NCBI GenBank assembly: GCA_977020255.1 | Contig: CDROCS010001822.1 | Coordinates: forward strand, 124,001-188,000 | From: Obrimoposthia wandeli | Lineage: Eukaryota | DNA: 64,000 nt | Direction: 5' to 3' | Part shown: piece after piece, positions 3,340 through 37,076 of the stretch | How the letters are laid out: every line of letters starts with the position of its first letter | Numbering within the stretch: the first letter of the stretch is position 1 | Notes under the pieces: model-generated | The model's database searches: none | What the model was told of the DNA's origin: nothing | Seen by the model: the letters and a program-made list of their open reading frames with translations, nothing else | Translations under genes and position numbers: made by a program

Positions 3340-3430
3340 ACCGTCACCTCCCTTTTTTCATTATTATCTCTGGCTTTGCGGGAAGCTCTACCTCGAAGTC
3401 AAAGATAATAAGCCATCCCACTGAAGAGCC
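3340..3430 (+). mobile_element. Short fragment homologous to the putative Penelope-like 3' end at 10650-10740
   Basis: cattattatctctgg...gaagtcaaagataataagccatcccactgaagagcc aligns with cattattatttctg...gaagtcagagataacaagccatacaactgaagagcc. Confidence 0.45.
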
Positions 3431-14324: not shown

Positions 14325-14665
14325 TTATCCTCATCATAATCCTTCATCCTTCATCTCATCTATGTAATCCTTTATCGTAATCCGGCATCTAATTTTCATT
14401 ATCGCAATCCATCATCCTTCATTTAATCATCTTCATTACCCCAATCCATCATCCTACATCTTCATTATCGTTCAATGCAATCCTTCAACGCAATCATTCA
14501 TCATAATCCAGCATCTAATCTTCATTATCGCAATCTCTCATCCTCATCTCATCATCTTCATTATCACAATTCCTCATCCTTCATCTCATCATCTGCATTA
14601 TCGCAATCTCTCATCCTTCATCTTACCATCTCATCAGTGCCATCCTTCATCGTAATCATTCATCT
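14325..14665. repeat. Low-complexity TCATC/CATCCT degenerate repeat into which the giant element inserted
   Basis: Repeated tcatc, catcctt and cattatcgcaatc units; the same sequence type resumes at 37998. Confidence 0.75.
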
Positions 14666-14840
14666 TGTTAGGTTTAAGAATTAAGAAATTAAAATAATTT
14701 AGTCGATTAAATACTAAAATAAAAATCCTTGAAAGCAAGGTTGAAAATTAAATTAAATATTAATTTTAGATTCAAAATTGAAATTAGTGGAAGTTAGGAT
14801 AAAAATTAGGAGGACCACGAAGGTCGTGTATAGTGTAGGA

Positions 14841-14848
14841 TATATAAG
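14841..14848 (+). promoter_or_regulatory. LTR TATA box
   Basis: TATATAAG; the homologous position in the solo LTR reads ATATATATAG (43261). Confidence 0.6.
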
Positions 14849-14939
14849 GTTAGATTAATTAACCCAAAAGTGCAACAAAAAGCACATAATTAAAGGAAAA
14901 GCAAAAGGGAACAATTGAGAAAATCGAACGTCAATCAAG

Positions 14940-14989
14940 GTAAGCACTTTTTCGTGCAGTTAAATTGGAGTAACTAAATTATTTTTCAG
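14940..14989 (+). other. Predicted 50-nt mini-intron in the LTR leader
   Basis: CAAG|GTAAGC...ATTTTTCAG|C; a 54-nt equivalent occurs in the solo LTR (43818-43871). Confidence 0.6.
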
Positions 14990-15146
14990 CTGCCGCCAAA
15001 ACTCCAGTTGAAACAGCTGTCGACATTGCTGATTGACAGCCAGGAGTTGCAGAAATCGACTATAAAAGTCGTCGACCAAAAAACAAATAGACACGAAAGA
15101 AAAAATCAATATCCCAAATCTACTGAAGGGAATCGACCACATATTG

Positions 15147-15152
15147 GTAAGT
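15147..15152 (+). promoter_or_regulatory. Major 5' splice donor of the LTR leader
   Basis: TATTG|GTAAGT, a perfect consensus; the equivalent in the solo LTR is TATTG|GTAAGA (44028). Confidence 0.7.
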
Positions 15153-15200
15153 GAGATTTGGTGAAATTTGGATTAACTTATTGTAGATCACAAGTCTATT

Positions 15201-15522
15201 GCCAATATCGTTTGAAAGAAATATCGTTAAATATTGCCAATATCGTTTGAAAGAAATATCGTTAAATTTTGCCAATATCGTTTGAAAGAAATATCGCTAA
15301 ATATTGCCAATATCGTTTGAAAGAAATATCGTTAAATATTGCCAATATCGTTTGAAAGAAATATCGTTAAATTTTGCCAATATCGTTTGAAAGAAATATC
15401 GTTAAATTTTGCCAATATCGTTTGAAAGAAATATCGTTAAATGATGCCAATATCGTTTGAAAGAAATATCGTTAAATTTTGCCAATATCGTTTGAAAGAA
15501 ATATCGCTAAATATTGCCAATA
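15201..15522 (+). repeat. 35-bp tandem repeat in 5' LTR, 9 full copies plus a partial
   Basis: Unit GCCAATATCGTTTGAAAGAAATATCGTTAAAT(A/T)TT starts at 15201, 15236 ... 15481. Confidence 0.97.
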
Positions 15523-15623
15523 CATTGTTAAAAGAAGCCGATCGTCGCAATATTCCCAAACTACCTACGGATCCTGTACCGGAATTTCAAGCAGCATATA
15601 GGTAAGAACACCGACTAAAGCAT

Positions 15624-16060
15624 TCATTGCCCCTAGTTGGCAATTAGGATACATTCATTGCCCCTTGTTGGTAATTCGAAATTGTAATATATTTTAACCA
15701 TATTCATTGTCCCTAGCTGACAATTAGGATTGCTGTCTCTTTAACCAAATCATTGTCCCTAGTTGACAATTAGGATTGTCCATTTTATTCATTGTCCCCA
15801 GTTGACAATTAGGAATTGTACGAGTTTTTTCCCGTAAGATTCATTGTCTCTAGCTGACAATTCGGTTCACTCATTGTCCCTAGTTGACAATTCGGAACAA
15901 ATACTCATTGTCCCTAGTTAACAATTCGGTCCACTCATTGTCCCTAGTTGACAATTCGGAACCAACACTCATTGTCCTAGTTGACAATTCGGAGTAAGTT
16001 TTCATTGTCATCGTTGACAATTAGGTTTTTAGGAGAATCATTGTCCACAGTGGACAATTC
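15624..16060 (+). repeat. Array of 12 short palindromic units TC-ATTGTC-n6/7-GACAAT
   Basis: Units at 15626, 15657, 15706, 15752, 15791, 15843, 15873, 15907, 15937, 15971, 16004 and 16040. Confidence 0.9.
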
Positions 16061-16329
16061 GTGGTTAAATACACAACAGATAGAGTTACGGATTCAAGAA
16101 ACTTTATCCACACATAAGAAGTTGAGTCGAAGAAATTTAAGAGGGTTGCGTTATAGATTAACCAACCTAGGAAGAAGAATAACCCTAAAATCTCGATCAC
16201 CCGAACGTAAAATCGATACGTGGTTCATCCCCACTTCTTGTAGAGACTTACAGAAGTCTTAGGAATTTTACCATACTTTTTAGAGATACGTACATAAACG
16301 TATTGTTGTGTTTAGTTACGTGAATTACC

Positions 16330-16335
16330 AATAAA
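16330..16335 (+). terminator. LTR polyadenylation signal (functional copy expected at 37787-37792)
   Basis: The only AATAAA I found downstream of the TATA box in this LTR; conserved in the solo LTR (~45729). Confidence 0.6.
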
Positions 16336-16548
16336 CAATTTCCTACATTAGAACAAGTTGTTTTTGCACCCTTCAGAATAAGAGACATCGAATCAAATAC
16401 CTTCAGATAGTACAAGAGATAGGCAACCATAACACTAAGTAGGCCACGACCAACTTTAAGACCTGCTTCTAATCGAACTCACGTTGGGGCCCTCCGCATT
16501 TCAGAGGATCTGTACCAAGTTTCGTATAGAAACCCCAACATATTAAAG

Positions 16549-16566
16549 TGGTGCCCCGAGTGAGGA
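16549..16566 (+). other. Primer-binding site complementary to the 3' end of elongator tRNA-Met
   Basis: TGGTGCCCCGAGTGAGGA vs the complement of vertebrate elongator tRNA-Met 3' end (recalled) TGGTGCCCCGTGTGAGGA: one mismatch. Separated from the LTR by TATTAAAG. Confidence 0.8.
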
Positions 16567-16605
16567 TAGCTCGTCGGACACAGCGAATTCACGTGGAATA
16601 AGTTC

Positions 16606-16965
16606 AGATATTGAGAATAAGTTTCAGGTAAAAAGAATAAGTTTAGATAAGTTTCAGATAATTGAGAATAAGTTTCAGGTAAATAGAATAAGTTCAGATA
16701 AGTTTCAGATAATTGAGAATAAGTTTCAGGTAAATAGAATAAGTACAGATATTAAGAATAAGTTTCAGATATTAAGAATAAGTTTCAGATATTGAGAATA
16801 AGTTTCAGATAAATTGAGAATAAGTTTCAGATAAATTGAGAATAAGTTTCAGATAAATTGAGAATAAGTTTCAGCAGAAGAATATAGACAATTGAGAATA
16901 AGTTTCAGAAGAAGATATAAGCAAATTTAGAATAAGTTTCAGAAGAAGATATAAGTAAATTGAGA
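16606..16965 (+). repeat. Degenerate tandem repeat (~20-nt core TTGAGAATAAGTTTCAGATA) in the 5' untranslated region
   Basis: More than 12 variants of gagaataagtttcag. Confidence 0.9.
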
Positions 16966-17455
16966 TAAGAATTTGATAAGTTTTTGAGAAATCGAGTAGA
17001 TTTGTTCCTCGAAGTTAAGAATTTGATAAGTGTTGAGAAATCGGGTAGATTTGTTCCTCGAAGTTAAGAATTGATAAGTTTTGAGAAATCGGGTAGATTT
17101 GTTCCTCGAAGTTAAGAATTTGATAAGTTTTGAGAAATCGGGTAGATTTGTTCCTCGAAGTTAAGAATTTGATAAGTTTTGAGAAATCGGGTAGATTTGT
17201 TCCTCGAAGTTAAGAATTTGATAAGTGTTGAGAAATCGGGTAGATTTGTTCCTCGAAGTTAAGAATTTGATAAGTTTTGAGAAATCGGGTAGATTTGTTC
17301 CTCGAAGTTAAGAATTTGATAAGTTTTGAGAAATCGGGTAGATTTGTTCCTCAAAGTTAAGAATTTGATAAGTTTTTGAGAAATCGGGTAGATTTGTTCC
17401 TCGAAGTAAGAATTCGATAAGTTTTGAGAAGTCGAGTGGATTTGTTCCTCGAGCC
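16966..17455 (+). repeat. 49-bp tandem repeat, about 10 copies, in the 5' untranslated region
   Basis: Unit GTTAAGAATTTGATAAGTTTTGAGAAATCGGGTAGATTTGTTCCTCGAA. Confidence 0.93.
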
Positions 17456-17991
17456 AGTAAATTTGATAAAGTGAGAATCGAGTGGATTGATACTCGAAGT
17501 AATTAATTGAATAGGTTAAGTCGGGAGACTCTGTCCTCGAACTAATTAAAGAGATAAAAAATCGTAAAATAAGAATTGTGAAATAAGATAAAAATAATAA
17601 GTAAATTGATATCGTAAACGAATACATAATTGATAAGACAACGGATAATAGAAAAGGACCCGCGTATAATACTAGAAGACAAAGTCAGATTCCCAAGGAA
17701 GAGATAAATAATAATAAAGTTAACCGAATTGAACAGGTTCCCCAAACAGATAACAAAGTAACAGAAAAGACTAGAGTCGAAGAAAACGTATCAGAAAGAG
17801 ACGTAAATCAATCAGCAGTTTCAACCGATAGTTTTGATCTGACTGAGTTATTTGGTGACATAAACCCAGAAGAAATTGATAATCTTGAAGTTCAAAACCC
17901 AGAAGAAATTGAAATTGCCAATCCAGTAGTGATTGAAGAAGTTCAAGTAAATAATATTGAAGGAATAGTTGAAGACGATATAGTTGAAGAT

Positions 17992-18687
17992 ATGGCTCAC
18001 CAAGGAGCTCCACCAGATATTAATGCAGGAAATAATGTAGGTGAAATGAATGCCGAGCAGTTGGCACAAGCTTTAAATGCGACGTTGAGACCCAATTTTT
18101 CAGGATCATTGCAGATTACAAAGTTTAAAGGAGATGAGGAAAGTATTTGTGACTTCCTCGCAGAATATTCGAGTTGTGCAGATGTTCAAGGATGGAACGA
18201 TAAAGAAAAATGTGTCAGAGTACAGGCACATTTAACCGGATTAGCACTTGAAGTGTATAAACATTTGACAGAAGCAGAACGCATAGATTGGCCAACGTTG
18301 GAAAATGCTTTTATTGGAAAATTGGTATTAGGAGACTTAGCCAAAGTAAATAAGCGACTCATGAGAGAACGGAAACAGAAACATGATGAAGGCGTGAACG
18401 AATACGCGTATGTTTTGAGAACCTTGGCCGCAAGAGCGTACCCAAGAAGAATAATGAGAAATCAGGACGGTAATCCTGTAGCTCCAGAAGCACAAGCAGC
18501 GGAAAATGACCGGAACCAAAATGAAATGGCAGAGGTTTTGTTAGATATATTTAGAGGAGGATTGAAAAAGGATATTAAAGTGTTATTAGCAGTATCGGAT
18601 ACAAACGATTTTGATAACGCCGTACGAAAGGCGAGAGAGATTGAGAAAAATATAAAAATAATGCAGCATTGGCAATTTACGCAATGA
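17992..18687 (+). CDS. gag: Gag capsid portion; the frame is open from 17605 without an ATG; probably continuous with the large ORF
   Basis: ITKFKGDEESICDFLAEY...GWND...LTGLALEVY...WPTLENAF...QKHDEGVNEYAYVLRTLAARAYP...IFRGGL is a typical Ty3/gypsy capsid. Confidence 0.88.
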   Translation: MAHQGAPPDINAGNNVGEMNAEQLAQALNATLRPNFSGSLQITKFKGDEESICDFLAEYSSCADVQGWNDKEKCVRVQAHLTGLALEVYKHLTEAERIDWPTLENAFIGKLVLGDLAKVNKRLMRERKQKHDEGVNEYAYVLRTLAARAYPRRIMRNQDGNPVAPEAQAAENDRNQNEMAEVLLDIFRGGLKKDIKVLLAVSDTNDFDNAVRKAREIEKNIKIMQHWQFTQ

Positions 18688-21600
18688 CTGCAGGTGACGA
18701 CGATAAAACAAAGGTATTTGTGAATAAAACAGAACCGAGTAATTTTCAGAATCGAAATTATGGACAAAATAAGTTCGAAAAAGTAGATGAATCCAGTAAC
18801 GGAAATAGAGATAATTTCCGAAGTAGGAATCGAGATGATTCGAGAGGTAGAAATAATAGTGAGTCTTGGAACAGGAATCGAGATGATTCAAGAGGTAGAA
18901 ATAATAATGATTCGTGGAATAGAAATAGAGATGATTCCAGGAATAGATTTAATAGAGATAATTCAGGAAATCGCCAACCTTGGAGAGGAGACGATAGGAA
19001 TTATAACGCCAACAGAGGAGAGCGAAGTGACTCTCGATTTGGAAATAATACAGGAAATAGCGACGGAAGATTCAATAATCGAGGAAGCGGTTTTGAATCG
19101 AATTTCCGAAGAAATTATTTTAGAGGGCGCTATGATAATAGACAGAATAGTCGTCGAGTACAGTTCGAAGATGAACAAAATAAGATAGATATTCGAGGGA
19201 GAATAATGTGTTACACGTGTAAGCAAATGGGTCACTATTCGAGAGATTGTACGAGAAGTAAAGAGTTCGGAACTAACAGATTTGGAAATAATAATTTCGG
19301 TAATAATAATTTTGGAAATAATTATAGAGGATATAATTCACCTCCGCCATGGAATAGAGGTGGTGGATATACTCCACAGCCATGGAGACCGAATAATCAG
19401 TATACAGATAGACAACAGTCACCAGGTAGATACAATAACTATGCAGACAGACAGCAAGGAGCTGAGAGATACAATAATTACGTAGGACAGCAAGGAGCTG
19501 AGAGATATAATAATTCTGGTAGATATAATAATAATAATGTCGACAAGACAAATAGTCGTGAGAGTTCGCCGAAACCGAAAGGAAATTTCAGTTATGTAAG
19601 CGATGACAGTGATAGGAATCGCGAGACCGAACTTCGACGCGAAATAGATTTTGAAGATAGTGATAGTAAATTTGAACGAATGTTGGGAATAATTAAAGAT
19701 TCACCACATACAAAGATGGCAAATTCATCTACGTTGTCGAAACAAGAAAAAAGTCTACACTCGAGAGAAGATATGAATGATTTAATGAATAAAATACTAG
19801 AAGCGTATGAGACACCAATAGAGAAAACGTGTAACGCACAACCGATGATTGAGCATGTAGAAGCAGCGAGAAATGCTACGAGTATGGAAAATGTAAAAAA
19901 GATAATTAGTGAAGCTAAGGAGACGTTAAATCAACCGTTAGATGAAACGAGTGAAGCTCCAGAAGTTTTGGCCAAATTACAAACAATTAAAGTGCACCGA
20001 TTGGAAGAAGTGCGTGCAGAATTGGTTAAACATAGTCATGATAACTTGGATTACAAAGAAGTACCACGAGGATTATTGAAAGGTTATGGTCGTTACGTAC
20101 AGAGATCAAACCAAAAAGGAACGATGAAAATTTCACTTCGATTAATTTCCGGACAGATAATACATGAAAAACTTAACGTGTATCAAACAATGAAAACGAT
20201 TCGGAAAAAGTTAGCCGAGAAACTTGAAATTGATGGAATGAATATGTTGTTCCATTATAAAGGGAGATCACTAGATGATGAGGACGTACCAGTCGAGTGT
20301 GGATATCCGATAGGAAATGAATTAGAGGAAAAAATTGATGTCATCACTGTAGGACGTCAAGAGTTAGTAGATAATGAAGGATTAACGGAGATATTGAATT
20401 CTGCGTTAGAAATGATAAAAACGCCTATAGAAATTTTAGACAGTTCAAGCGAAAGCGGAGATAATGATGTAGCTGAAGCTTGGAACAAGACATCCACACC
20501 AGAACCGTACGTAGCTGAATTACAAGATATGAATTTAGAAAATGAGTTGACAACTCCAGTGGTCGAGGTGCCACCAGAACCAGATATAATTCAAATCAGA
20601 CAAGATGAAGTCACGGATACAGCTAACCAAGTGCGACAAAACGAAACCGTAACCCAACTAGTAGGAGAAGACGAAGTCTCCGAGATTGTAGATTTGGATT
20701 CACCAATTTGGCATGCCGCATACAGAGATAGACAAGCAGAGCAAATGATGCGACAAAATGAAGAGATTGGCCATGAAGAAGGACCAAGTCACGAGATACA
20801 GTATAATGGTGAACCGTATGATCCAGGAGAGAATCAAACTGAGTATCAGTATTTTCGAAGAGGACCTGGAAGACCTAGAAAAGGCGAAAGTATATTACGA
20901 AATGTTCTAACTGCACCACAAACTGATGAAGAGAGACATCTAAGTATTGGACAGTTAGCAGCGTCATTAGAGCAGTATAGTGCAGAGAGGAATGAAGATA
21001 TCAGAGGTGATATGAATTCGGAAACTCCAAGTAGTAAAGATATACTTACGGGAATTCTCAGGCAAGTGAAGCCGAAGTTGTTTAAAATGTACAGAGATGA
21101 AACAACCGATATAACAGACAATTTGACTAAAGCAGTTAGATCACAAATGTCTGCAGTAAAGAGAATGACTGCGAATCATGTATACCATGCATCCATAGAT
21201 AGATTCTATGACGGTGAAGTTTTAGCGAGATTATGTGGAAACCAAACTACAAATAAAAAGTTAATTACAGCGATCACATATCTATGTTTCCAATTGACGG
21301 AACGAACGAGCCAACCTCACGAAGTCAAACAAGGAATAAATGAAGCGATGTATTTGATCGAGAATGTATTACAGAGACGAATTGACGAAAATGGAGGTTG
21401 GGCAAAATTAAGTGACTACGCTAAAACCATTTTGGAAATGAATGAAGACGATGACGAACAATGTCATGAGAATCGTCAAAAGGAAAATAAACAATACCGT
21501 CCGAAAGAGAGAAACAATCAACCAAATATGTCCACAACAATGATGATGATGATGTTAGTAATGTTTATGGGAATGCAACAGGCATCAGGATTGATAGCAT

Positions 21601-24600
21601 ATGACTGTAGCATACCAAAGATGGGACAAAAGTATTCACTGCTTGACAGCGAAGACTGTCCAGAGTCACAGCCGTCAAAATTAGAAGTTAAAGGTGTTGA
21701 AAACTACTTTGTGTATCAGGATGTTGATAAAGTACAAGTAGAAGTGAAAGAATGTTCAATCCATTCAAGTTATCACGAATTCTATTGTGGCCATAGAAGT
21801 TTTATGTCAGAAATTACACCTACCACACCGTACAAGGCACATAAGGTTTTGCCGAGAGATTGCGAAGACGCATTTCGAACGGGAACAATAGAGGTAGACA
21901 AGAATTACAAACCTGATGTAAAAATTGGAGTGAGACGATACGAAACAGTCACGAGAGTCGGACAACGATGGGCTGATGGATCTTGTAACGGAGGAACAAA
22001 AAACGTACGTGGAACCAAAGTAACTGCGTTAGTAATGGACGTAACTTACAAAATCGAATTAAAAACATGGACCGCCAATTTTGATAAAAAGACACAACTA
22101 ATGATGACGTATCCAGAATGTAAAATGACAGATACATCTTGTTTTACAGGCGAATCCACAATTGTGTATCAAGTGAATCCGAAGCAATGCTCTTTAGTAT
22201 TTTTGAAAGAGATTAGTTTTAATAAAATAAAAGGATTCCTGTATAATAGAGATGGAGAAGGATTCCTGTATAATAAAGTTGGAAAAGGATTGCTCAATGA
22301 AACAAGACCAATCCCAATGACAAAAACACCTACACTGTTAATGGCAACATCAATAGAAGAAGGATTGATATTTATTAAAAAGAGAAACAAGACGCGATGC
22401 GGAATGACTGTTAGTACTACAAACTATCCAGGAATAGTTTTGTCCAAAGAAGCAATAGCATTGGCAGAAACCAAGCTAAAACCAAAAAATATGCAGCTAC
22501 ACACGTATTTTAGTAATAAAATTGATTTCTATTATCATAAAGGATTGATGCAAATGGAACAGTTATATCGAATGATGATCGAAAGAGATTGCCAGCTAAA
22601 CAAAGAGATCGTAAGAACAAAGTTAGCATTAGCTATTACGAATCCAGACATGGTAGCACCATTATTACCCTTGGATGAAGGAGTATTTGCTAAAACCATG
22701 GGAGAAGTATTGTATACTTACAAGTGTAATAAAGTAGAAGTACAGTTGAGAACAACAAACCGATGTACGAGTGAATTGGCAGTAACGTATAATTTAAAAG
22801 ATCTTTTTGTTGAACCAATCACGAGAATGATACTTCCAAAAGACACTCCAACTAAAGAAATCAGCTGCTCTAATATAATGGCACCTGAATATCAGATGAC
22901 GAATGATTTATGGATAACGTTACCTGATCGAAAGCCAACGAAAACCCCAGCGATGATAAGAATGACGAATCTTAAAGGTAAAATGAAATTCCAAGCGGTG
23001 GAAAATATGGAGAACGCAGGATTGTACAATGAAAAAGATTTAAAAGCGGCGTGGAACGAAATAATGTTTCCAGTAAAAAGAGCCAGAGTACTTACGGAGA
23101 TGGTACATCGAGCATTACCGCCAGGAGCGAGATATGCGAATTTCGATATGTTATTATCGCCAAGTCATTTCAAGGAAGCAGCACATCAGACACTTAGAAA
23201 GATGTGGGGGAAATTCCTTGTTTTAGGACAATTATTTTCGGGTATCATAGGTATTTATGTTATAATTAAATTTGTGCAGGTAATTATAGCCCAGGTGTTG
23301 TCTACGTATAGTTTATACAGGATAACCGGAATCACCTGGCAACTTATAATTGGATGTTTTCCATTTTTAGCAAAATATCTAATGCACCATCATCACGAGA
23401 ACGAGTTGCGAGCCCTCAAGAAGGAACAACACCAAACGAGAACCATGATGCGAGAACCAAGAAACTATCGAGACGACAACGACGACGATAATGATAGTCC
23501 AGGAGTATATGCAAAGATACCCGGAAAACCAAAGATTCCGTTACCAGACAAGGAAGAAGTGGCGTTAAACCTATATCCAATGAAGGAACTAAAGGAGGAG
23601 AAGGAAAAGTTCAAGAGAGGCATCTTAATGATAAGATGGCCTAAAGTGAGCTACAGTGAGATTCCACAAGCAGAGGAAAAAGACAAAAAAGATAATTCCA
23701 GAAGAATTCTGAAGTCTAGGATATCAAATGAGAATCCAAATGCTCCACCACAAGTAGCAGTAACATTAAACGGAAGAGAATATCTTGCCGAAGTTGATAC
23801 CGGATCTGCAGTATCAGTACTGAGTAAAGAAATCTTGTCATCAAAAGAATTAAGAGAAGTATGTCCTAGAAAACAGACATTTGTTAACGTGAATGGTACA
23901 GATGTAGTGTCGGAAGGAACACTGAAATGTTCGTTGAATATCGATGGAAGAGCATTGCAGTTAAATGCTAGAATATTCACAGATTGCGGTAGTCCAGTCA
24001 TGATTTGGATGGACGTAATACGAATGTTTGAAGGAATAATTATACTACCAAACAACAAGAGTTATAAGAATGACAGTTCAGTGAGAGAGATAAAAATGTT
24101 GAGAGGACCTATAGTCGAAAAGGAAAAATACACTACGTTCCGTATGGGAAATTCGTACCAAGACAAAAAACAGGAAGCGCTAGTAAAGTCGATACTTCAC
24201 TACAAAAACGTAAACCTCGGACCACAAGAGATGACGAGGAGAAAAATAACATATGTGAATCTGTCAGAAAGGGATCCCATGAGATTCGAGAGAAAGAGAC
24301 GAAATATATTAGAACTGTACTATTCAAAAGAAATGGCACGTAAAATGGCAAGATCAGGTTTAGAAATGTTAAATGCGACAAGCAGTTATGGTCATGAGAT
24401 AGTAGTACGATGCGTATGGTGTAGAGTAAAGTTTAGAGAGTGGGAAAAGAATGAAAACCCAATGAGACGTCATAAAAGAGATGCACCAAATTGTCCATTT
24501 CTTTTAAAACTGAAAACTTCAAACGTACCAGAAATCCAAACGGGAAAAGTACCCGATTTCGATTACAGTGACGGGATTCCAAAAGGAGAATCAGCTCTAA

Positions 24601-27600
24601 TAACAGGTAGAGTAATAACAAATAGCCGAATTGAAGATATATTCGAAGTTATGCGAGAAGTGAACGAATGTGACGAACAGTATCGAGAAGTAACTTTCGA
24701 AGACCCAAGACTTAAAAAATTGGCAAAAAAGGGACTTTTTGCTATAAAAAAGGATGGTAAAGACGTAATTAAATGCCACAAGTGTAAAAAAGAACGAATT
24801 ATCGACAGATATACTCTTGAGCTACCTAATAAAATTTTACATCATGAATTTTGCGAGTTTGGTATGTTAAAAAACAAAATAAAGCAAAAAGAACAGAAAA
24901 CCGAATGTATAATCGAATACCAAATCACACGAAAAGAGATTTTGGCTCAACAAGACACACCAGTAGTGTCATTCGTGAGAAGGTTATATCCAAAAGAAGC
25001 AGAAAGAATCAGAGAATTGGTAGAATTAAAAATAAAAACTACGCGAAACGGATACGGATCGATTTTTGAATTACTGCGAGATAAAGATGACAGTACAATT
25101 GAAACAAAAGAGAAAGAGTACATAAATGAACTAGAATACGTACTAGAAGATCCGGAATGCGCAGTTTGCATGGTCAACAAAATAGAAGTTGCCTTTCTAC
25201 CATGCGGACATGTAAGAACATGTCGGAGATGTGCGAATGAAATGGTATCATGTCCGATTTGTCGAAGAATAATAGATCGACAAGTGAGAAACATTAGATT
25301 TCACTATCCAAACATAGGAAGTGGACTGACAGAGTGTAATAATTCGATAAATACAATATACCATATGGGAAACATAAATGGAGCACAGCGACCAGCAGCT
25401 ATCATTAGAGTAAATAATTTAAGAGTAAAAGCCTTAATTGATACAGGTGCTGTAGCTTCGATAGTAAGTGAAGACTGTTTGACAGAGGAACAGAAACGAA
25501 CAATGGCAGAACCAGATGAATTCTTGGTATCGGTCAATGGAGACCCTGTAAAAGTGACGGGAATATTACCATGTACATTTATAATTGGACGTAATACGAT
25601 CACTATACCAGTTAGAATCATGAAAGAATGTCCTGAACCTACAATTTTAGGAATGGATGTACTATCACAACTTAAAGGGATAAGTATTGATTTACAAGAT
25701 CCAAGATTGAAGGATAGCACATCAAACAGACAAATAAACCAAATTGATGTAATTATAGAGAATCCTATAAAAATCGGTAAAAGATCACAATTTCTCATTC
25801 AAGGTCACACATTATCAGAAGATAAAGGACCAGTTGTGTTCGAACCATCACGAGATTTCATAGAGAAATACGAATTACCAGTTGTGAGTACAGTATGCCT
25901 GATCGAAAACCACAAAATACCAGTTAGACTGATGAATACAACCAACAATGACATTCTATTATACAGAGGAATGAGGTTGGGAAAGATAGCACAGATGGAG
26001 AATCCCACCGTGTGTGCTACGAAACTCGATAAAGATACGAATGATTACGAAGAAATAGTAATCCAATCAGAAAGACTGACAACTAGAGAAAAGAAACAAT
26101 TACTTGATCTAATACATAAATTTCCGAAAGTAATTGCAAAAAATCCATATGACATAGGAGAAACACCTGTCATAAAACATACAATACCACTGACAGAAGA
26201 CAAAGTAGTCAGAAGAAGACCATATCGAGTACCATTACAATTACAAGATGAAGTAAAAAGTCAGATTGAAGATATGTCTAAAACAGGAGTAATTAGACCG
26301 AGTTTTTCGCCATTCTCAGCACCTGTGGTGTTGGTAAAAAAGAAGGATGGGAAAATGAGATTCTGTATAGATTTCAGAGAACTGAACAAGATCACAAGAA
26401 AAGATGTGTATCCATTACCTAGAATCGAAGAGATGCTCGATAAATTGGGTAATTCAGATTATTTTACGACATTAGATTTGCAGAGTGGATACTGGCAAAT
26501 CGAGATAGAGGAAGAGGACAAACACAAAACAGCCTTTTCCTGCGGAGATGGACTGTACGAATGCGAAAAGATGCCATTCGGACTGACAGGAGCTCCAGCA
26601 ACATTTCAGCGTTGCATGAATTTTGTACTCGCATCGTGTGCAAACACGATGGTTTATATTGATGACATAATAATATTTTCGAAAACGTTCGAAGAACATT
26701 TAAAAAATCTTGAAGTTGTATTTAAAAGACTGGAAAACGCTAAATTAAAAGTTAAACCTACAAAATGCGAATGGGCTAAAGAGCGAGTAACATTTTTAGG
26801 ACATATAGTATCGAAAGAAGGCATTCGTCCTGATCCGGCAAAGATCGAGAAAGTAAAAGCGCATTTAGCGCCAAAGACTGTTAAGGAGATACAGAGTTTT
26901 TTAGGTCTTGCGAATTATTACAGACGATTTGTTGAACATTTTTCAGATATAGCAACACCATTGAGAAAGTTGACGAGGAAAGATGAGAAGTTCATATGGG
27001 GAGAAGAAGCCCAACAAGCATTCGAGCATTTAAAAGAAAGACTGATAAAAGAACCAATATTAGCGTTTCCAGATATAAACCGACAATTCATACTCATGAC
27101 AGATGCAAGTAACTATGCTGTAGGAGCAGTATTGGGACAAGAGGATGACGAAGGAAGAGAACACGTCATCGCGTATGCGAGTAGAGGATTAAACAGAGCC
27201 GAAAGAGGATACTCTGTTATCGAAAAGGAATGTCTAGCCATAGTGTATTCATGTAGACAGTACAGACACTACTTGCTAGGACAAAAAGTATTCCTGTATA
27301 CAGATCACAAACCACTACAGTTCTTATATAAACATAGAGATGAGATGAGTAGATTAAACAGATGGTTTCTAAAATTGGCCGAATTCGATCTAGAAATCCG
27401 TTATAGAACCGGAAAGTCGAATGGCAACGCAGATTGTTTATCGAGATTGACAAATGTAGATGAAAAAGGAAACATAATTCCAGAGGAAAAACAAGATGAA
27501 ACCAATGACCAAAAAGGAGAAGCAAATCTACTGACGATTTTGCTAAAGACGGTTAAAATAGACAAAGAGATCATCAAAGAACAGAAAGAAGATGAAGAAC

Positions 27601-30600
27601 TGAGTCTAATCAAAGAATTGTTGGTGAAAGGAGATCTAAACGATGAAATGACGAAAAAATACTCGATAAAAGAAGGAATCTTGTATATTGTCAATAATGT
27701 CGGAAAGATAGTAGTAGTAATTCCGAAGTCATTGAAAACAGCAGTGATGATCCAGTATCACGACGGAACACTAGGAGGACATCTGTCAGGGCGAAAGACA
27801 ATAGCCAGAATCAAAGAGAAGTACCATTGGGATGGTATGGAAGACGACATAAAACAATGGTGTAAACAATGTAAAGTATGTTTAACCAGAAAAGACACTG
27901 GAACTCGTACTAAAGTTCCACTGAAACCAATGCCAGTTCCCTTGGCACCAATGGAATTCATAGCGATGGATATATTGGGACCATTGAGAGAATCAAGTAA
28001 AGGAAACAAGTACGTCATAGTATTTACGGATTACATGACGAGATGGGTAGAAGCATATCCCATGCAAAACCAGAAGGCTGAAACAATAGCACAAATCTTA
28101 GTGGAAGAGATAATATTTCGATACGGAGTGCCTAGAAAGTTGTTAACGGATCAAGGTAAGAACTTCACTGGAGAAGTCATAAAAGCAGTATCGAAGATAT
28201 TCGGAATCATGAAGTTACAAACTTCACCATATCACCCACAGACAGATGGTCTGGTAGAAAGGTTTAATAAAACTTTATGTATGATGGTACAATCCTATTG
28301 CTCCGACAAGCAAGAGGATTGGGATAAATATTTACCTTCATGTTTATATGCTTACAGGAATTCAGTTCGAGAGGCGACGGGTCACACACCATTCTATCTG
28401 ATGTATCTCAGACAGAACAATATGCCGATGGATCTGGAGTGGACCGAGCCAACATCTCAGTATCTAGAAACTGAACAATACATTGTCGTCATGAAGGAAA
28501 GATTACAAGATGCTTGGACCAAAGCCGGATTGAAGTTGAAATTCAATCAAGAAGGTTACAAGGAACAATACGACAAAAAAGCAAAACCACATGAATTTAG
28601 AGTCGGAGATCAAGTGATGATATTTTATCCAGTCATCGAACCAGGTCTATTGTTTAAACTTCATAGACCATACAAAGGACCATACAAGGTGATCCAGACA
28701 ACCTCAACAAATTTGAAAGTAATCAACGAAGAGAATCGGAACAAGGAACCGATGATTGTACATGCAAATCGATGCAAATTAGTACCAAATAAAGATAATG
28801 CGTCACGATATGAGTTAAGATCACAGAAATCGAAATCGAATACCAATACCATTAAACTTACACGAATGGTAAGTGATCGGAACTACATAAACATGATGAC
28901 GAGTGGTAGCGAGAAAAAACCAGCGAGAATTGGTATGCTCAGAATGAAGTACCAAGAGGAAAAGGAAGTAATCCGACACATCGCACCACAAGAGATATTA
29001 GAAGAAGACGAAGAGATAATAGTCGTTTTCGAAAAAACACAACCCACAGATGTGGCTAAAGAAGTCATTGTGAAAGATGCACTGACAAACGAATTTCTGT
29101 GCGAACTTAGAGTGTCATACTACGACGGAAATACATTAGTCGCAGCACTATATCAAAACTCCAATGTGTTTACGACTGAGAAAGTGCTAATCGAAATCAC
29201 ATTGACACCAAACATAGTTGCATGGCAGAACTATGACAGTACTGAAGCAGGACTAGCCAGTCAGGAAGAGAAGGAACCGGCCGGTGGTCACATACTGCAT
29301 GGTACACCAAAAAGACTTAAACAAGAATACCCCGATGTAATAATGGTATTACGTAATTCACATGGGAAAAGAGATATCATGAGAGTCCATTTAATCGACG
29401 CTGATACTGAAAAGATAATTTGTCAGATGGATACTAAATACTTTGATGGAAAGACAATTGTATGTTGTATACCAGAATCTCACCGGTTAGACACAGATCA
29501 AACGGAAGTATCTGTAAGGTTGAGCGTAATAGAAGGATTCCATTCGCCAACCCATCCGGAAGTGACTAACAATAAAATCATCAAAGCAACGGCAGAGTTA
29601 CGCATTGACAGCGGATACCGGAAGTGGGAAGCTAAAAATAAAAAACCACAAAGAATCAATATGATCCGAGAACAAGTGACCAACTCAATCCAGCCAAAAT
29701 ATCATGCTGAAATAGTATCATCCGCGCCAAGTGTGATCACATCGATAAACGACGAAATTATAATTTTACTAAAAAATCGATGGCCGTCATCAACTGAGAT
29801 ACGAGTAAACTTAATTAATTATGCGAAGACACCGATATCTAAGCTGAATGTTACCTATTTCGATGGATTGTCCATCATGGGTAAATTAGAAACAATTGTC
29901 ATGTGCTATGGAGCACAGTTCCAAGTTGAGATACTTAAAGATAGTGTAATACCGTATCCGATTCACAAATACGAAGGGAAAATCAATCCAATTATTCTAA
30001 CCCCTTCATTAATTTCAGTTCAGACAGACATACCAGAATACCCTTCGAGCGAGTCTAGTGAAGACAGCGAACCAGAAAGTAACGATACAGAATCAACAGA
30101 ATCCGAAGATAACATAATAGAGCGATTCGGAAGAACCATGGAGGTTGAATTCGCTAAAGAGAGCAGAAAAAGACAAAACATAGAATTCGTGAAACAGAAT
30201 ATACAAGAAAGACGAATTAAATCTGCAGAAGAGACCGAGTCGGAAGAAGACTCAACAAAGGAACAGACATCAGAGACAAAGATGAATATCTCTCCAGCAA
30301 TACGAATGCTGAGAGGAAAGAAACTGGCGAAACTATCCAACATCGACGAACAAATAGAGAAGAGATTAGAAAGACTAAAACTTGAAGAGTCAGAATTAAT
30401 GCCACCAATGAGTGAGATCATAACAGGTAAGTTATACCTCGGAAATGTGGAGGATGCAACAGATGAAAAGAAACTGTTGGAACAAGGGATAACATACGTG
30501 ATCAACGTTACAATGAATCACAAATCGCAATATCAGACGATCAGAGCTATGACATTAAGAGTAAAAGACTCAATGGACGCTAATCTTCTCGAATGGTTTG

Positions 30601-34153: not shown

Positions 34154-34453
34154 ATGTCCGAAGAATGCCCAATATGTTTGGAAGATCTAACCGAACGAAG
34201 AACAAGACCCGAAACCTGCAACCATTTACACCACGAGGAATGTTTATCGACATAGATCAGAACTTATGGACAGTTCGGACATCCAACATACCCTTGTTGC
34301 CCTGTATGCAGAAGACAATTCGCAAGATTCATCATGTTAGAACCCAACCAAGAGGATGTATATGTACAGGTGGTATTCTGTTGGAAGAATTTCGGAGAGT
34401 GTTGGTGTTATTACTGTTTGTCAGAACGACAAAATCCGACCACTTTTGTGTAA
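34154..34453 (+). pseudogene. RING-H2 accessory gene 1 with an in-frame TAG at 34253 (W codon in paralog)
   Basis: MSEECPICLEDL...TCNHLHHEECLST*IRTY...CPVCRRQF...FCWKNFGECWCYYC is colinear with gene 2. Confidence 0.85.
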
Positions 34454-34513
34454 ACATCACACAACCACCAGTCCTCAATCGAGCCCAAATTCAACATCAA
34501 CCCTCTCACAGTA

Positions 34514-34819
34514 ATGTCTGGAGAATGTTCCATCTGCTACGAGAGCATCATGGACTTCTACACCAAGCCCAACAACTGCGACCACCTCTTCCACGTCGAA
34601 TGCCTCGAGACGTGGATCCCCATCGCCAACAGCAACAATCCCCTCGACTTCCCAACCTGCCCGATGTGTAGAGCGACCTTCTCAGTACACTACGTGTACA
34701 ACCAGGACAGCCTCCAAGCAGTGGTACCCATAGTACACTGCTGGAAAACCATCTGCGATTGCTGGTGCTCGTTCTGCGTGGAGGAGCGAAGCACAGGCCA
34801 GCCCAATTCCCAACAATAA
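34514..34819 (+). CDS. RING-H2 accessory gene 2 (101 aa, putative E3 ligase)
   Basis: CSIC...CDHLFHVECLETW...CPMC, followed by the extra Cys cluster HCWKTICDCWCSFC. Confidence 0.88.
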   Translation: MSGECSICYESIMDFYTKPNNCDHLFHVECLETWIPIANSNNPLDFPTCPMCRATFSVHYVYNQDSLQAVVPIVHCWKTICDCWCSFCVEERSTGQPNSQQ

Positions 34820-35158: not shown

Positions 35159-35656
35159 ATGAAGTGTACCGTCTGCCTCGAGAAAATTTGGACGGCATCG
35201 GCATCCCCTGTCGGCTGCCGTCACAAATTCCACGAATCATGCCTATATACTTGGGCCCGACTTCGACCCGAAGGACACGTAAATTGTCCATTGTGCCGTA
35301 CTCCCTTCGCGGAATGGACACTGCAGTGTCGAGGGCGCCACAAGGGCACCCATTCGCTCACCAGCTGTATTGGTGGCGAGCACTGCCATTGCCCCAATTG
35401 TATCGCGCGCCGTCGCGATGCAAAACTCGCTCTCCGCGAGAAATATCGGTCAACTCGCGACCCCCGCTCATGGCAGCGTGGCCGTCAAATATGGCTCGAG
35501 AATCGCGGAGTACACGGGCGGTACACGACCATTTTTCACCCGAGCCAACATCTCACCATGCGCCAGCAGATGATACTGTACAATGGCGGCCCACCATCGT
35601 ATCCAGAACTACCACTGGAGCAGGTCTTGCTGTTCCTGAAGGACAGGAACGGTTGA
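35159..35656 (+). CDS. RING-H2 accessory gene 3 (165 aa, putative E3 ligase)
   Basis: CTVC...CRHKFHESCLYTW...CPLC, plus HCHCPNC; ATG directly follows TTTTCTTGTGCAG. Confidence 0.88.
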   Translation: MKCTVCLEKIWTASASPVGCRHKFHESCLYTWARLRPEGHVNCPLCRTPFAEWTLQCRGRHKGTHSLTSCIGGEHCHCPNCIARRRDAKLALREKYRSTRDPRSWQRGRQIWLENRGVHGRYTTIFHPSQHLTMRQQMILYNGGPPSYPELPLEQVLLFLKDRNG

Positions 35657-36975: not shown

Positions 36976-37076
36976 CATTGTTAAAAGAAGCCGATCGTCG
37001 CAATATTCCCAAACTACCTACGGATCCTGTACCGGAATTTCAAGCAGCATATAGGTAAGAACACCGACTAAAGCAT

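What the first reader, a model, noticed from the sequence alone, without database searches (positions are those of the whole stretch)
14841..15152. Non-coding leader exon architecture conserved between two otherwise diverged LTR subfamilies
Element LTR: donor 14940, 50-nt intron, 157-nt exon (14990-15146) ending CACATATTG|GTAAGT. Solo LTR: donor 43818, 54-nt intron, 156-nt exon (43872-44027) ending CACTATTG|GTAAGA. The intervening sequences barely align, yet splice-site spacing is kept, and in both a tandem array starts just after the second donor. With TATA near the start and AATAAA near the end, the R region would be about 1.5 kb. The donor may also suppress the 5' LTR poly(A) site, as in HIV-1 (inference).
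Basis: partly seen in the sequence, partly recalled or inferred. Interest (0 to 1): 0.8.

Follow-up and report, generated by a model that had tools for sequence, protein, structure and literature searches.

The report
Conserved leader intron in retroelement LTRs
Two diverged versions of the long terminal repeat of a giant virus-like retroelement in an unidentified invertebrate keep the same strong splice signals (short intron, ~157-nt non-coding exon, second donor) inside a kilobase-long start-codon-free leader, which suggests retrovirus-style spliced messages, although no RNA data were available to prove it.

Summary
All coordinates are exact, and the donor / 50-54-nt intron / 156-157-nt exon / donor arrangement occurs nowhere else on either strand of the window under a strict motif definition. 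Simulated chance of the matched spacing in the solo LTR is about 5e-5. Conservation sits on the splice signals (intron z=5.0), not on the exon (z=1.1).

The setting is a 23.3-kb GAG-ENV-POL Ty3/gypsy-type element (14666-37997, TSD ATCT) plus a true solo LTR (43086-45943, TSD CTTG).

New supporting evidence:
- From the conserved TATA to the gag ATG (3.1 kb) the + strand has essentially no ATG (0 versus ~38 expected with arrays collapsed).
- A canonical poly(A) site lies in the 94%-conserved terminal block, so R would be about 1.5-2.5 kb.
- All three 3' RING accessory ORFs start 0-2 nt after acceptor motifs (p about 1e-6).

Corrections and caveats:
- Exon 1 is not length-conserved, because the homologous TATA of the solo LTR is at 43262.
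- The ATG desert also covers the "introns", so unspliced RNA is translated too.
- Donor 2 overlaps an ATTGG/CCAAT box that both downstream arrays multimerise.
- SL trans-splicing could serve the RING acceptors.
- No transcript data exist.

This is a new variant of a known kind (a splice donor in R, as in foamy viruses).

The parts
14662..14665 (.). Target-site duplication ATCT, repeated at 37998-38001
14666..16540 (+). 5' LTR (1875 bp; TGTTAGG...CCCCAACA)
   Evidence: 98.7-98.8% to the 3' LTR
14666..14870 (+). Putative U3: blocks shared with the solo LTR, hairpin-like GGACCACGAAGGTCGTGT (about 14811-14829), TATA at 14841-14848
   Evidence: the TSS position is inferred
14871..14939 (+). Putative leader exon 1 (5' end inferred from the TATA; ATG-free)
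14940..14989 (+). Putative intron 1, 50 nt: GTAAGC ... TAAC branch-like motif ... attatttttcag
   Evidence: (z=5.0 against the solo copy)
14990..15146 (+). Putative leader exon 2, 157 nt, no ATG, no sequence or structure conservation
15143..15152 (+). Donor 2 (ATTG|GTAAGT); overlaps an ATTGG box
   Evidence: the 9-mer ATTGGTAAG occurs only at donor 2 of the three LTRs
15197..15522 (+). 35-nt tandem array (9.3 copies; 14.3 in the 3' LTR), one CCAAT per unit
15602..15607 (+). Third strong donor motif (atag|GTAAGA); not conserved in the solo LTR
15620..16060 (+). Array of ~30-34-nt hairpin-like units carrying ATTGTCCC
16199..16540 (+). Terminal block 94% conserved with the solo LTR: acceptor-like tract (exon start 16244), AATAAA at 16330-16335, CA sites, GTTGTTTTTG, putative U5 (about 16351-16540)
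16549..16566 (+). PBS-like TGG... sequence 8 nt after the LTR end
   Evidence: similar position in relatives L001 and L002; no tRNA gene in the window to match
16541..17991 (+). Internal leader, 1451 nt, no ATG; 20-22-nt array (16596-16969) with GTTTCAG x13; 49-nt array (16966-17452)
17605..18687 (+). gag-like ORF: first ATG at 17992, frame open 129 codons further upstream; weak Retrotrans_gag match
18669..33899 (+). Giant ORF, 5076 codons without a stop: CCHC knuckle, class III fusion glycoprotein (PF24664), BIR, RING, aspartic protease, RT, RNase H, integrase, dual-specificity phosphatase, ~900 aa unknown with TM segments. In a different frame from the gag-like ORF (one frame change)
34154..34513 (+). 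RING accessory ORF 1 (interrupted: one premature stop and apparently one frame change); acceptor motif 1 nt before its ATG
34514..34819 (+). RING-H2 accessory ORF 2 (101 aa, intact); acceptor motif 2 nt before its ATG
35159..35656 (+). RING accessory ORF 3 (165 aa, intact); acceptor motif abuts its ATG
35944..37997 (+). 3' LTR (2054 bp); same sites at 36218 (donor 1), 36268 (exon 2 start), 36425 (donor 2); AATAAA at 37787; no ATG at all
43086..45943 (+). Solo LTR of a diverged subfamily (2858 bp; TSD CTTG at 43082-43085 and 45944-45947)
43262..43270 (+). TATA of the solo LTR, colinear with the element TATA; the only ATG of this LTR (43202) lies upstream of it
43818..43871 (+). Putative intron 1 of the solo LTR, 54 nt (GTGAGC ... 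TTAAC ... attatttgcag)
43872..44027 (+). Putative leader exon 2 of the solo LTR, 156 nt, no ATG
44024..44033 (+). Donor 2 of the solo LTR (ATTG|GTAAGA), first of 18 ATTGGT motifs
44041..45116 (+). 64-nt tandem array (16.9 copies), each unit with ATTGGT and ATTGTCCC; followed by a 49-nt array at 45106-45326
45598..45943 (+). Conserved terminal block of the solo LTR with AATAAA at 45730

Best explanation
The flagged region is the start of the transcribed leader of a giant (23.3 kb) GAG-ENV-POL Ty3/gypsy-type endogenous retrovirus-like element.

Proposed mechanism:
1. Transcription starts just after a TATA box conserved in both LTR types, about 180-200 nt into the LTR (inferred).
2. It ends at a canonical poly(A) site about 190 nt before the LTR end (inferred from sequence). 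R is then 1.5-2.5 kb and contains the tandem arrays.
3. Near the 5' end of R lie a real but inefficiently or facultatively spliced 50/54-nt GT-AG intron, a 156/157-nt non-coding exon and a second strong 5' splice site.
4. That second site serves as the major donor for subgenomic mRNAs, joining the AUG-free leader directly to acceptors that abut the start codons of three 3' RING-finger accessory genes (inferred).
5. The unspliced RNA keeps the introns, arrays, U5 and PBS. It is both the template for reverse transcription, which is why the intron survives in the LTR, and the gag/polyprotein mRNA, read by ribosomes that scan a 3.1-kb leader purged of AUG.
6. U1 snRNP bound at the unspliced donors may also silence the poly(A) site of the 5' copy of R, as shown for foamy viruses (speculative).
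For: Shown by sequence:
- Exact GT/AG positions and spacing in three LTR copies of two subfamilies.
- The arrangement is unique on both strands of the window and P is about 5e-5 by simulation.
- Donor motifs are about 6 times denser in the LTRs than elsewhere.
- Conservation is concentrated on the donor, a TAAC branch-like motif, the Py-tract/AG (intron z=5.0) and the donor 2 flank (z=3.0), while exon 2 is random-like (z=1.1) yet keeps its length to within 1 nt.
- ATG desert: the four longest ATG-free runs of the + strand (2813, 2547, 2109, 965 nt; next 390) are the LTRs and leader. With arrays collapsed there are 0 ATG against 37.8 expected (P=4e-17), and 0 against 24.2 for the solo LTR (P=3e-11), whereas the other A/T/G permutations occur 14-51 times.
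- The solo LTR's single ATG lies upstream of the conserved TATA.
- The conserved AATAAA with downstream CA and a GT/T-rich element sits in the 94% block, and the element LTR has no other AATAAA between the TATA and that site.
- Acceptor motifs lie 1, 2 and 0 nt before the three RING ORF ATGs (P=1.3e-6).
- The same acceptor|ATG pattern appears at accessory ORFs of distant relatives L002, L004 and L005, and relatives also have ATG-free leaders.

Precedents: a donor in R upstream of the poly(A) signal with U1 suppression in foamy viruses (PMC3694450); a spliced accessory mRNA in the Ty3/gypsy element Cer1 (PMC10309623).
Against: - No RNA evidence of any kind; the TSS, poly(A) site and junctions are all inferred.
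- There are only two independent LTR types.
- The ATG desert covers the proposed introns too, so it supports transcription and scanning of the region but not splicing.
- The arrangement is not seen in the leaders of relatives at ~55% Pol identity.
- Exon 1 differs about 7-fold in length between the subfamilies.
- Donor 2 overlaps an ATTGG box that the arrays multimerise, so part of its conservation may be at the DNA level.
- The two host introns that could be mapped are 153 nt and 2.2 kb, not ~50 nt.
- The RING acceptors could be SL trans-splice sites if the host trans-splices.
Confidence: 0.55

Rival explanations
1. The conserved motifs act at the DNA level as promoter or enhancer elements and are not spliced. 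Donor 2's ATTGG is an inverted CCAAT box, the downstream arrays are multimerised CCAAT/ATTGG (plus ATTGTCCC) binding sites, and the fixed ~157-bp spacing reflects promoter geometry (for example one nucleosome).
For: - ATTGGT is repeated 17 times at 64-nt spacing right after donor 2 in the solo LTR, and CCAAT 10-15 times at 35-nt spacing after donor 2 in the element LTRs.
- ATTGTCCC occurs only in the LTR arrays of both subfamilies.
- An ATTGG/ATTAG also lies in the conserved part of intron 1.
- Exon 2 has no sequence or structure conservation, only length.
Against: - It does not explain why donor 1 and the acceptor are near-consensus splice sites with a Py tract and branch-like motif at the right distances.
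- It does not explain why only the first ATTGGT copy has the full GTAAG while array copies have GTAAT or GTGAT.
- It does not explain why acceptors abut the accessory ORF starts.
- The two readings are not mutually exclusive.
Confidence: 0.2
2. The accessory-ORF acceptors are spliced-leader trans-splice sites of a trans-splicing host, so they need no LTR donor. The LTR donors then serve at most the small leader intron.
For: - Acceptors 0-2 nt upstream of start codons are typical of SL trans-splicing (established knowledge for nematodes and flatworms).
- GAG-ENV-POL elements with class III env are reported from Nematoda, Bryozoa and Platyhelminthes (PMC13524379).
- The pattern recurs in relatives whose leaders show no strong donor.
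Against: - The host is unplaced: the best GPCR hit is an unnamed 44% match and there are no close nematode or flatworm hits.
- No SL RNA or any other Rfam family is found in the window.
- Donor 2 is a near-perfect U1 match with no downstream partner inside the LTR other than sites in the conserved block.
Confidence: 0.2
3. Transcription starts downstream of the flagged sites, for example from the TATAAAAG at 15061 inside 'exon 2' or further on. Donor 1 and the acceptor would then lie in U3 and never be transcribed from the 5' LTR.
For: - A consensus TATAAAAG flanked by a GTCGAC palindrome lies at 15061-15068.
- The TSS is nowhere measured.
Against: - That TATA is absent from the solo LTR's exon 2.
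- The TATA at 14841/43262 is colinear and preceded by a conserved hairpin in both subfamilies.
- The solo LTR is ATG-free from 43203 onward, including ~420 nt between its first TATA and its second TATA-like motif (0 ATG against ~8 expected over 43270-43817). That fits a start at the upstream TATA.
Confidence: 0.1
4. Chance resemblance, or neutral retention of spacing between homologous LTRs, with no function.
For: Only two independent LTR types exist; AT-rich sequence is rich in weak splice-like motifs (359-462 acceptor motifs per strand).
Against: - Simulation gives P=5e-5, and there is no other strict triple in 128 kb.
- Exon 2 has diverged to randomness while three 6-12-nt signals survive.
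Confidence: 0.03

Closest known systems
Foamy virus (Spumaretrovirinae) LTR: major splice donor in R upstream of the poly(A) signal (PMC3694450)
   Same: The order is promoter - 5' splice site - poly(A) signal inside R. There is the same need to silence the poly(A) site in the 5' copy, and a proposed role for U1 snRNP binding independent of splicing.
   Different: Here R would be 1.5-2.5 kb rather than a couple of hundred nt (own knowledge). There are two or three donors and a complete intron inside R, and the donor lies ~1.2-1.7 kb from the poly(A) signal. The host is an invertebrate and the element is Ty3/gypsy-type. Nothing has been measured.
HIV-1 major splice donor / 5' poly(A) suppression
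   Same: An unspliced 5' splice site near a duplicated poly(A) signal; an AUG-free scanned leader (HIV-1 scanning: PMC3130279, title and abstract seen).
   Different: In HIV-1 the donor lies downstream of the poly(A) site and of the PBS, outside the LTR. Here the donors lie upstream of both, inside the LTR.
Deltaretroviruses (HTLV-1/BLV) with a long R and a splice donor in R (own knowledge, not tested here)
   Same: A donor within an unusually long R; spliced mRNAs for accessory/regulatory genes at the 3' end.
   Different: No complete intron in R; R is about ten times shorter; unrelated Pol lineage.
Cer1 of C. elegans (Ty3/gypsy) with a spliced mRNA for the accessory protein CERV (PMC10309623)
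   Same: A Ty3/gypsy-type element that makes a spliced accessory mRNA while exporting unspliced genomic RNA. In that study consensus acceptors precede the predicted initiator ATG.
   Different: In Cer1 the exons are carved out of gag/pol coding sequence, and no LTR-internal intron is reported in the passages read.
GAG-ENV-POL 'errantiviruses' with class III (gB-type) env in Nematoda, Bryozoa and Platyhelminthes (PMC13524379)
   Same: Gene order gag - class III fusogen - pol; Ty3/gypsy Pol; LTRs and a PBS.
   Different: This copy is 23 kb with one 5076-codon ORF that also carries BIR, RING, a second protease-like domain and phosphatase domains, plus three RING ORFs. The paper's text has no mention of splicing, giant size or phosphatase.
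Drosophila gypsy / ZAM / Idefix leaders with tandem repeats (own knowledge)
   Same: Tandem arrays of short factor-binding repeats in the transcribed 5' leader; spliced env mRNA from a leader donor.
   Different: There the arrays lie downstream of the LTR. Here they lie inside R and multimerise CCAAT/ATTGG and ATTGTCCC motifs.

Membership tests
Ty3/gypsy-type (Metaviridae) LTR retroelement | Direct LTRs with TG...CA ends flanked by a short target-site duplication | tested here: met
   LTRs 98.7-98.8% identical, TGT...ACA ends, 4-bp TSD ATCT; the solo LTR has TSD CTTG
Ty3/gypsy-type (Metaviridae) LTR retroelement | Pol domain order PR-RT-RNase H-IN | tested here: met
   Pfam hits in that order within the giant ORF
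Ty3/gypsy-type (Metaviridae) LTR retroelement | tRNA primer-binding site next to the 5' LTR | tested here: inconclusive
   A TGG-initiated 18-mer lies 8 nt after the LTR, at a similar place in L001 and L002. No tRNA was available to match it
GAG-ENV-POL errantivirus-like group (PMC13524379) | Class III fusion glycoprotein encoded between gag and pol | tested here: met
   PF24664 at E=9e-94 between the CCHC knuckle and PR. No sequence-level match in the PDB
GAG-ENV-POL errantivirus-like group (PMC13524379) | Placement within the published Pol clades / gB-type cysteine-bridge pattern | not tested
   No tree or structure was built. The nearest relatives are unnamed metagenome contigs at 51-57% identity
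U2-type GT-AG spliceosomal intron | GT at the 5' end with U1-complementary flank, and AG at the 3' end preceded by a pyrimidine tract | tested here: met
   aag|GTAAGC...attatttttcag and cag|GTGAGC...attatttgcag
U2-type GT-AG spliceosomal intron | Branch-point-like motif 15-40 nt upstream of the AG | tested here: met
   TAAC / TTAAC about 16-17 nt upstream of the AG, conserved in both
U2-type GT-AG spliceosomal intron | Exon-exon junctions observed in RNA | not testable with these tools
   The source genome and transcripts are absent from the collections
Retroviral major splice donor in R with U1-mediated poly(A) suppression (foamy-virus type) | 5' splice site located in R upstream of the poly(A) signal | tested here: inconclusive
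   The order TATA (14841) - donors (14940, 15147, 15602) - AATAAA (16330) is in the sequence, but the R boundaries are inferred, not mapped
Retroviral major splice donor in R with U1-mediated poly(A) suppression (foamy-virus type) | U1 snRNP binding at the donor suppresses cleavage at the 5' LTR site | not testable with these tools
   Requires RNA 3'-end data
Spliced-leader trans-splicing acceptor | Acceptor immediately upstream of the start codon | tested here: met
   1, 2 and 0 nt before the RING ATGs
Spliced-leader trans-splicing acceptor | Host possesses SL RNA, and SL-bearing reads occur at the site | not testable with these tools
   No Rfam hit in the window; the host is unplaced

The most novel reading that the evidence does not exclude
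An invertebrate giant endogenous retrovirus-like element runs a 'complex retrovirus' expression programme that evolved independently of vertebrate retroviruses. It would have a kilobase-scale R (1.5-2.5 kb, far longer than any R I know of) holding a complete intron and the major splice donor. It would have a 3.1-kb AUG-purged leader scanned to reach gag (possibly with non-AUG initiation in a 129-codon upstream extension). It would also use donor-dependent control of the duplicated poly(A) site and make spliced mRNAs for captured RING E3-ligase accessory genes.
Probability: 0.3. Interest if true: 0.75.

Novelty: new variant of a known kind. Interest (0 to 1): 0.55.

Why it matters
If RNA data confirm it, splice donors placed in R, leader introns and spliced accessory-gene mRNAs would be shown to arise in invertebrate Ty3/gypsy-type elements too. 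These features are otherwise known from foamy and delta retroviruses.

It would also expose two unusual constraints that can be studied by sequence alone:
- An intron inside R must be kept by packaging only unspliced RNA.
- A 3-kb leader can be kept entirely free of AUG by selection.

The ATG-desert criterion found here is a simple, annotation-free way to delimit the transcribed leader, and hence the approximate U3/R boundary, of LTR elements in unannotated genomes.

Tried and rejected
- gag homologue search, meant to fetch 5' LTRs or transcripts: nothing at E<=1e-5.
- Exact-sequence look-ups of the two intact RING ORFs, hoping for other copies or transcriptome contigs: not on record.
- Scan of JGI metagenome and IMG/VR contigs with a 21-mer identical in both LTR types: no match.
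- Relatives at 51-57% Pol identity (L001-L005): their LTRs are unalignable, truncated or chimeric with bacterial DNA. None shows the donor-acceptor-donor triple in its leader even with relaxed donors. They did support ATG-free leaders and acceptor|ATG accessory ORFs.
- Conserved RNA structure in exon 2: rejected (z=-2.2 against +1.5).
- Env subgenomic mRNA: no acceptor motif before the internal signal-peptide ATG at 21528, so env seems to be made from the polyprotein.
- Host placement through the class-C GPCR: best hit an unnamed 44% match. Rfam found nothing and there are no tRNA genes.
- Calibrating intron size on host genes: only two introns could be mapped (153 nt and 2.2 kb), too few to judge.
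- The bacterial promoter/terminator scan is irrelevant to a eukaryotic element and was ignored.
- Two simulation scripts timed out before a faster version ran (then 49).
- The consensus line printed by the aligner was not used.
Full report
OBSERVATION

- Element 5' LTR: aag|GTAAGC at 14940, ttttcag|C ending at 14989, a 157-nt segment 14990-15146, then attg|GTAAGT at 15147.
- Downstream LTR: cag|GTGAGC at 43818, tttgcag|A ending at 43871, a 156-nt segment 43872-44027, then attg|GTAAGA at 44028.
- The 3' LTR of the element repeats the first pattern at 36218 / 36268 / 36425. Only one base differs from the 5' LTR across 14666-15196.

WHAT THE SEQUENCES ARE

- The element spans 14666-37997 (23,332 bp). 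Its LTRs are 1875 and 2054 bp and 98.7-98.8% identical. They differ mainly by 9.3 versus 14.3 copies of a 35-nt array.
- The LTRs have TGT...ACA ends, a 4-bp target duplication (ATCT) and a TGG-initiated PBS-like sequence 8 nt after the 5' LTR.
- The second LTR (43086-45943) is a true solo LTR. It has the same termini, its own 4-bp duplication (CTTG) and no internal sequence beside it.
- It shares the first ~220 bp (73%) and the last ~340 bp (94%) with the element LTR. At 16/20 stringency nothing colinear is shared in between.
- Internally there is a gag-like ORF (first ATG 17992) and, in another frame, a 5076-codon ORF with no stop. That ORF carries a CCHC knuckle, a class III fusion glycoprotein domain (PF24664, E=9e-94), BIR, RING, aspartic protease, RT, RNase H, integrase and dual-specificity phosphatase domains.
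- Three small RING-finger ORFs follow.
- Break count: the giant ORF has no breaks. The gag-like ORF and the giant ORF are in different frames (one frame change; I could not tell whether it is programmed or mutational). RING ORF 1 is interrupted (one premature stop and apparently one frame change). RING ORFs 2 and 3 are intact.
- The gene order gag-env-pol with a class III fusogen matches the 'GAG-ENV-POL errantiviruses' described from Nematoda, Bryozoa and Platyhelminthes (PMC13524379).
- The nearest relatives in the protein collection are unnamed metagenome contigs at 51-57% identity across PR-IN that also carry PF24664.
- The host is an animal: a class-C GPCR and a D-Tyr-tRNA deacylase flank the element. 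It could not be placed.

IS THE ARRANGEMENT MORE THAN CHANCE?

- I used a deliberately simple definition: donor = G|GTRAG; acceptor = YAG preceded by at least 8 pyrimidines in 12.
- The + strand then has 20 donors in 64 kb, 8 of them in the three LTRs. The only donor-(40..70 nt)-acceptor-(120..200 nt)-donor triples on either strand are the three LTR ones.
- In 20,000 first-order Markov simulations of the non-array part of the solo LTR, 0.35% gave any such triple and 0.005% gave one with spacing within +-4 / +-1 nt of the element's.
- With relaxed donors the background is 7 triples per ~122 kb, which still leaves the match at the 1e-3 level.

WHERE CONSERVATION SITS

Global alignments against shuffles give z=5.0 for the intron, z=3.0 for the 50 nt after donor 2, z=1.1 for exon 2 and z=1.4 for the 75 nt before donor 1.
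- Inside the intron the shared parts are the donor, a GAGT(T)AAC motif with a branch-like TAAC about 16-17 nt from the AG, and the attattt(t/g)cag tract.
- Exon 2 has no shared sequence and no shared RNA structure (z=-2.2 and +1.5), yet its length is kept to within 1 nt.

This is the pattern expected of selection on splice signals.

THE MOST INFORMATIVE NEW RESULT: AN ATG DESERT

- On the + strand the 3' LTR has no ATG in 2054 nt.
- The solo LTR has one ATG in 2858 nt, at 43202, 60 nt upstream of its TATA.
- The 5' LTR has two, both in one variant array unit that the 3' LTR lacks.
- The 1451 nt from the LTR end to the gag ATG have none.
- The four longest ATG-free runs in the window (2813, 2547, 2109, 965 nt) are exactly these regions; the next longest is 390 nt.
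- Collapsing each tandem array to one unit still gives 0 ATG against 37.8 expected (P=4e-17) from the TATA to the gag ATG, and 0 against 24.2 (P=3e-11) for the solo LTR. The other permutations of A, T and G occur 14-51 times. CAT is common, so the effect is strand-specific.
- Relatives L001, L003 and L004 also have 0.5-2.1-kb ATG-free stretches directly upstream of their first gene.

I read this as the footprint of a scanned 5' UTR: essentially the whole LTR downstream of the TATA, plus the internal leader (3.1 kb in all), is present in a translated mRNA.

This has two consequences.
- Because the desert also covers the 'introns' and the arrays, the unspliced RNA must itself be a translated message. 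Splicing at these sites cannot be constitutive.

The second point is also required by retroelement logic (established knowledge). The R-U5 of new LTRs is copied from the 5' end of the packaged RNA, so an intron in R can persist only if unspliced RNA is what is packaged.

PROMOTER AND POLY(A)

- The TATA at 14841 is colinear with a TATA at 43262 in the solo LTR. Both are preceded by the conserved hairpin-like GGACCACGAAGGTCGTGT.
- The 420 nt between the two are ATG-free (0 against ~8 expected over 43270-43817).
- So exon 1 would be about 70 nt in the element but about 530 nt in the solo subfamily. The 'conserved architecture' holds for intron 1, exon 2 and donor 2, not for exon 1.
- The AATAAA at 16330 / 37787 / 45730 lies in the 94%-conserved block. 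CA dinucleotides follow 12-20 nt downstream, then GTTGTTTTTG, which is a canonical animal poly(A) site.
- The element LTR has no other AATAAA between the TATA and this site. The solo LTR has three others.
- With these assignments R is about 1.48 kb (5' LTR), 1.66 kb (3' LTR) and 2.46 kb (solo LTR), and U5 is about 190 nt. All of this is inferred.

WHAT THE DONORS MIGHT SERVE

- The start codons of the three RING ORFs (34154, 34514, 35159) lie 1, 2 and 0 nt downstream of acceptor motifs.
- Only 1.1% of internal positions have that property, giving 1.3e-6 for all three.
- The same acceptor|ATG arrangement precedes accessory ORFs downstream of pol in L002 (19559), L005 (11375, 12169) and, 3 nt away, L004 (12411).
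- Joining donor 2 to any of these acceptors would create no new ATG and would place the ORF's own ATG first.
- No acceptor precedes the internal signal-peptide ATG of the glycoprotein (21528).
- Spliced accessory mRNAs are documented for the Ty3/gypsy element Cer1 (PMC10309623).

The best model is therefore a foamy/delta-retrovirus-like layout: splice donor(s) in R, upstream of U5 and the PBS, feeding subgenomic mRNAs, with unspliced RNA serving as genome and gag/polyprotein mRNA.

A 1.5-kb R puts that site far from the cap, so promoter-proximity occlusion cannot apply. The idea has its closest precedent in foamy viruses, where the donor lies upstream of the poly(A) signal in R and U1 snRNP binding suppresses it (PMC3694450). 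Here it is untested.

CAVEATS AND RIVALS

1. Donor 2's conserved core ATTGGTAAG occurs only three times in the window, once per LTR, but its ATTGG is an inverted CCAAT box. In the solo LTR it is the first of 18 ATTGGT motifs that then repeat every 64 nt. In the element the array that follows repeats CCAAT every 35 nt. A second 8-mer, ATTGTCCC, occurs only in the LTR arrays of both subfamilies. The arrays therefore look like multimerised factor-binding sites, and part of donor 2's conservation may be at the DNA level. Against this being the whole story, only the first copy keeps GTAAG (array copies have GTAAT or GTGAT), and donor 1 and the acceptor have no such alternative.
2. Acceptors that abut start codons are also typical of SL trans-splicing, and two of the three phyla known to host GAG-ENV-POL elements trans-splice. 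The host is unplaced, and no SL RNA was found in the window.
3. A consensus TATAAAAG lies inside exon 2 of the element (15061), but it is not conserved in the solo LTR.
4. The triple is not seen in the leaders of relatives at ~55% Pol identity.
5. The two host introns I could map are 153 nt and 2.2 kb, so ~50-nt introns are not shown to be typical for this host.
6. There is no RNA evidence at all. gag has no detectable homologues in the collection, the RING ORFs are not on record, and a 21-mer conserved in both LTR types finds nothing in the metagenome or viral contig collections.

COMPARISON AND NOVELTY

- The element type (GAG-ENV-POL with class III env) is known. Splice donors in R, U1-mediated poly(A) control and spliced accessory mRNAs are known from retroviruses and from Cer1.
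- Features I did not find described in the papers I could search: a complete intron plus a second donor inside a kilobase-scale R in an invertebrate Ty3/gypsy-type element, a 3.1-kb AUG-free leader, and the giant gene complement (IAP-like BIR+RING, phosphatase, three RING ORFs).
- I rate it a new variant of a known kind with moderate-to-high interest, limited by the lack of RNA evidence and by having only two independent LTR types.

DECLARATION OF SLIPS

- In my private reasoning I once wrote from memory a short primer-binding-site string attributed to a known retrovirus, as a mental comparison.
- While reading RING ORF 1, I worked out in my reasoning where its interruption lies.

The consensus line printed by the aligner was not used.

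Noticed in passing
window 14476-17991, 35944-38052, 43203-46015 (+ strand): ATG desert. The four longest ATG-free runs of the window coincide with the LTRs and the internal leader. With arrays collapsed there are 0 ATG against ~38 expected (element) and 0 against ~24 (solo LTR). Relatives L001, L003 and L004 show the same upstream of their first gene.
   Followed up: yes
window 17605-17991; L001 about 3423-3707: The gag reading frame is open for 129 codons upstream of its first ATG (P about 1e-6 given the local stop density) and encodes acidic, coding-like sequence. L001 has a similar ~95-codon ATG-less extension. This suggests non-AUG initiation or an N-terminal extension of gag.
   Followed up: partly
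window 18669-33899: One uninterrupted 5076-codon ORF carries NC, an internal signal peptide plus a class III fusion glycoprotein, two aspartic-protease-like domains, BIR+RING (IAP-like), RT-RH-IN and dual-specificity phosphatase domains. It ends with ~900 residues that have no Pfam hit but several hydrophobic segments. Env has no acceptor before it, so it appears to be made from the polyprotein.
   Followed up: partly
window 34154-35656: Three paralogous RING-finger ORFs lie between pol and the 3' LTR, one of them interrupted. The region has higher GC (43%) than the rest of the element, and each ATG directly follows an acceptor motif. Relatives carry different accessory ORFs (RNase_T-like, ankyrin) at the same place, some with the same acceptor|ATG pattern.
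   Followed up: partly
window 15197-15522, 15620-16060, 36475-37480, 44041-45116: The LTR tandem arrays of both subfamilies multimerise CCAAT (element, forward) or ATTGGT (solo, inverted). They share the 8-mer ATTGTCCC, which occurs nowhere else in the window. These are probably reiterated factor-binding sites.
   Followed up: partly
window 16596-16969: A 20-22-nt leader array carries GTTTCAG in 13 units, and three units read tttcag|GTAAA. This makes a cluster of acceptor-like and donor-like motifs just downstream of the PBS.
   Followed up: no
window 14366-14665 and 38000-38300: The element is inserted into a satellite-like C/T/A-rich array (37/126-nt periods) that continues on the other side of the insertion.
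   Followed up: no
L001 about 16500-24948; L002 1-about 7180: The metagenome contigs carrying the closest relatives (ENA ERZ25039515) switch abruptly from ~35% GC element sequence to 55-77% GC DNA with bacterial genes. They are most likely chimeric assemblies.
   Followed up: partly
window 40262-41924 and 42098-42407: Further tandem arrays (52/72-nt units rich in ATTAATGATAT) and a 153-nt tandem duplication lie between the element and the solo LTR. Their origin was not examined.
   Followed up: no
window 47469-51868 (+) and 5406-5906 (+): Host genes: a class-C GPCR (ANF_receptor + 7tm_3) with introns of ~2.2 kb and 153 nt, whose closest homologue is only 44% identical, and a D-Tyr-tRNA deacylase. 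The host lineage is poorly represented in the protein collections.
   Followed up: partly
L004 2-38 and 16741-16777: A 37-nt head-to-tail redundancy at the contig ends of a relative (NODE_1 of its assembly). It could reflect LTR or R overlap, or an RNA-derived contig.
   Followed up: no
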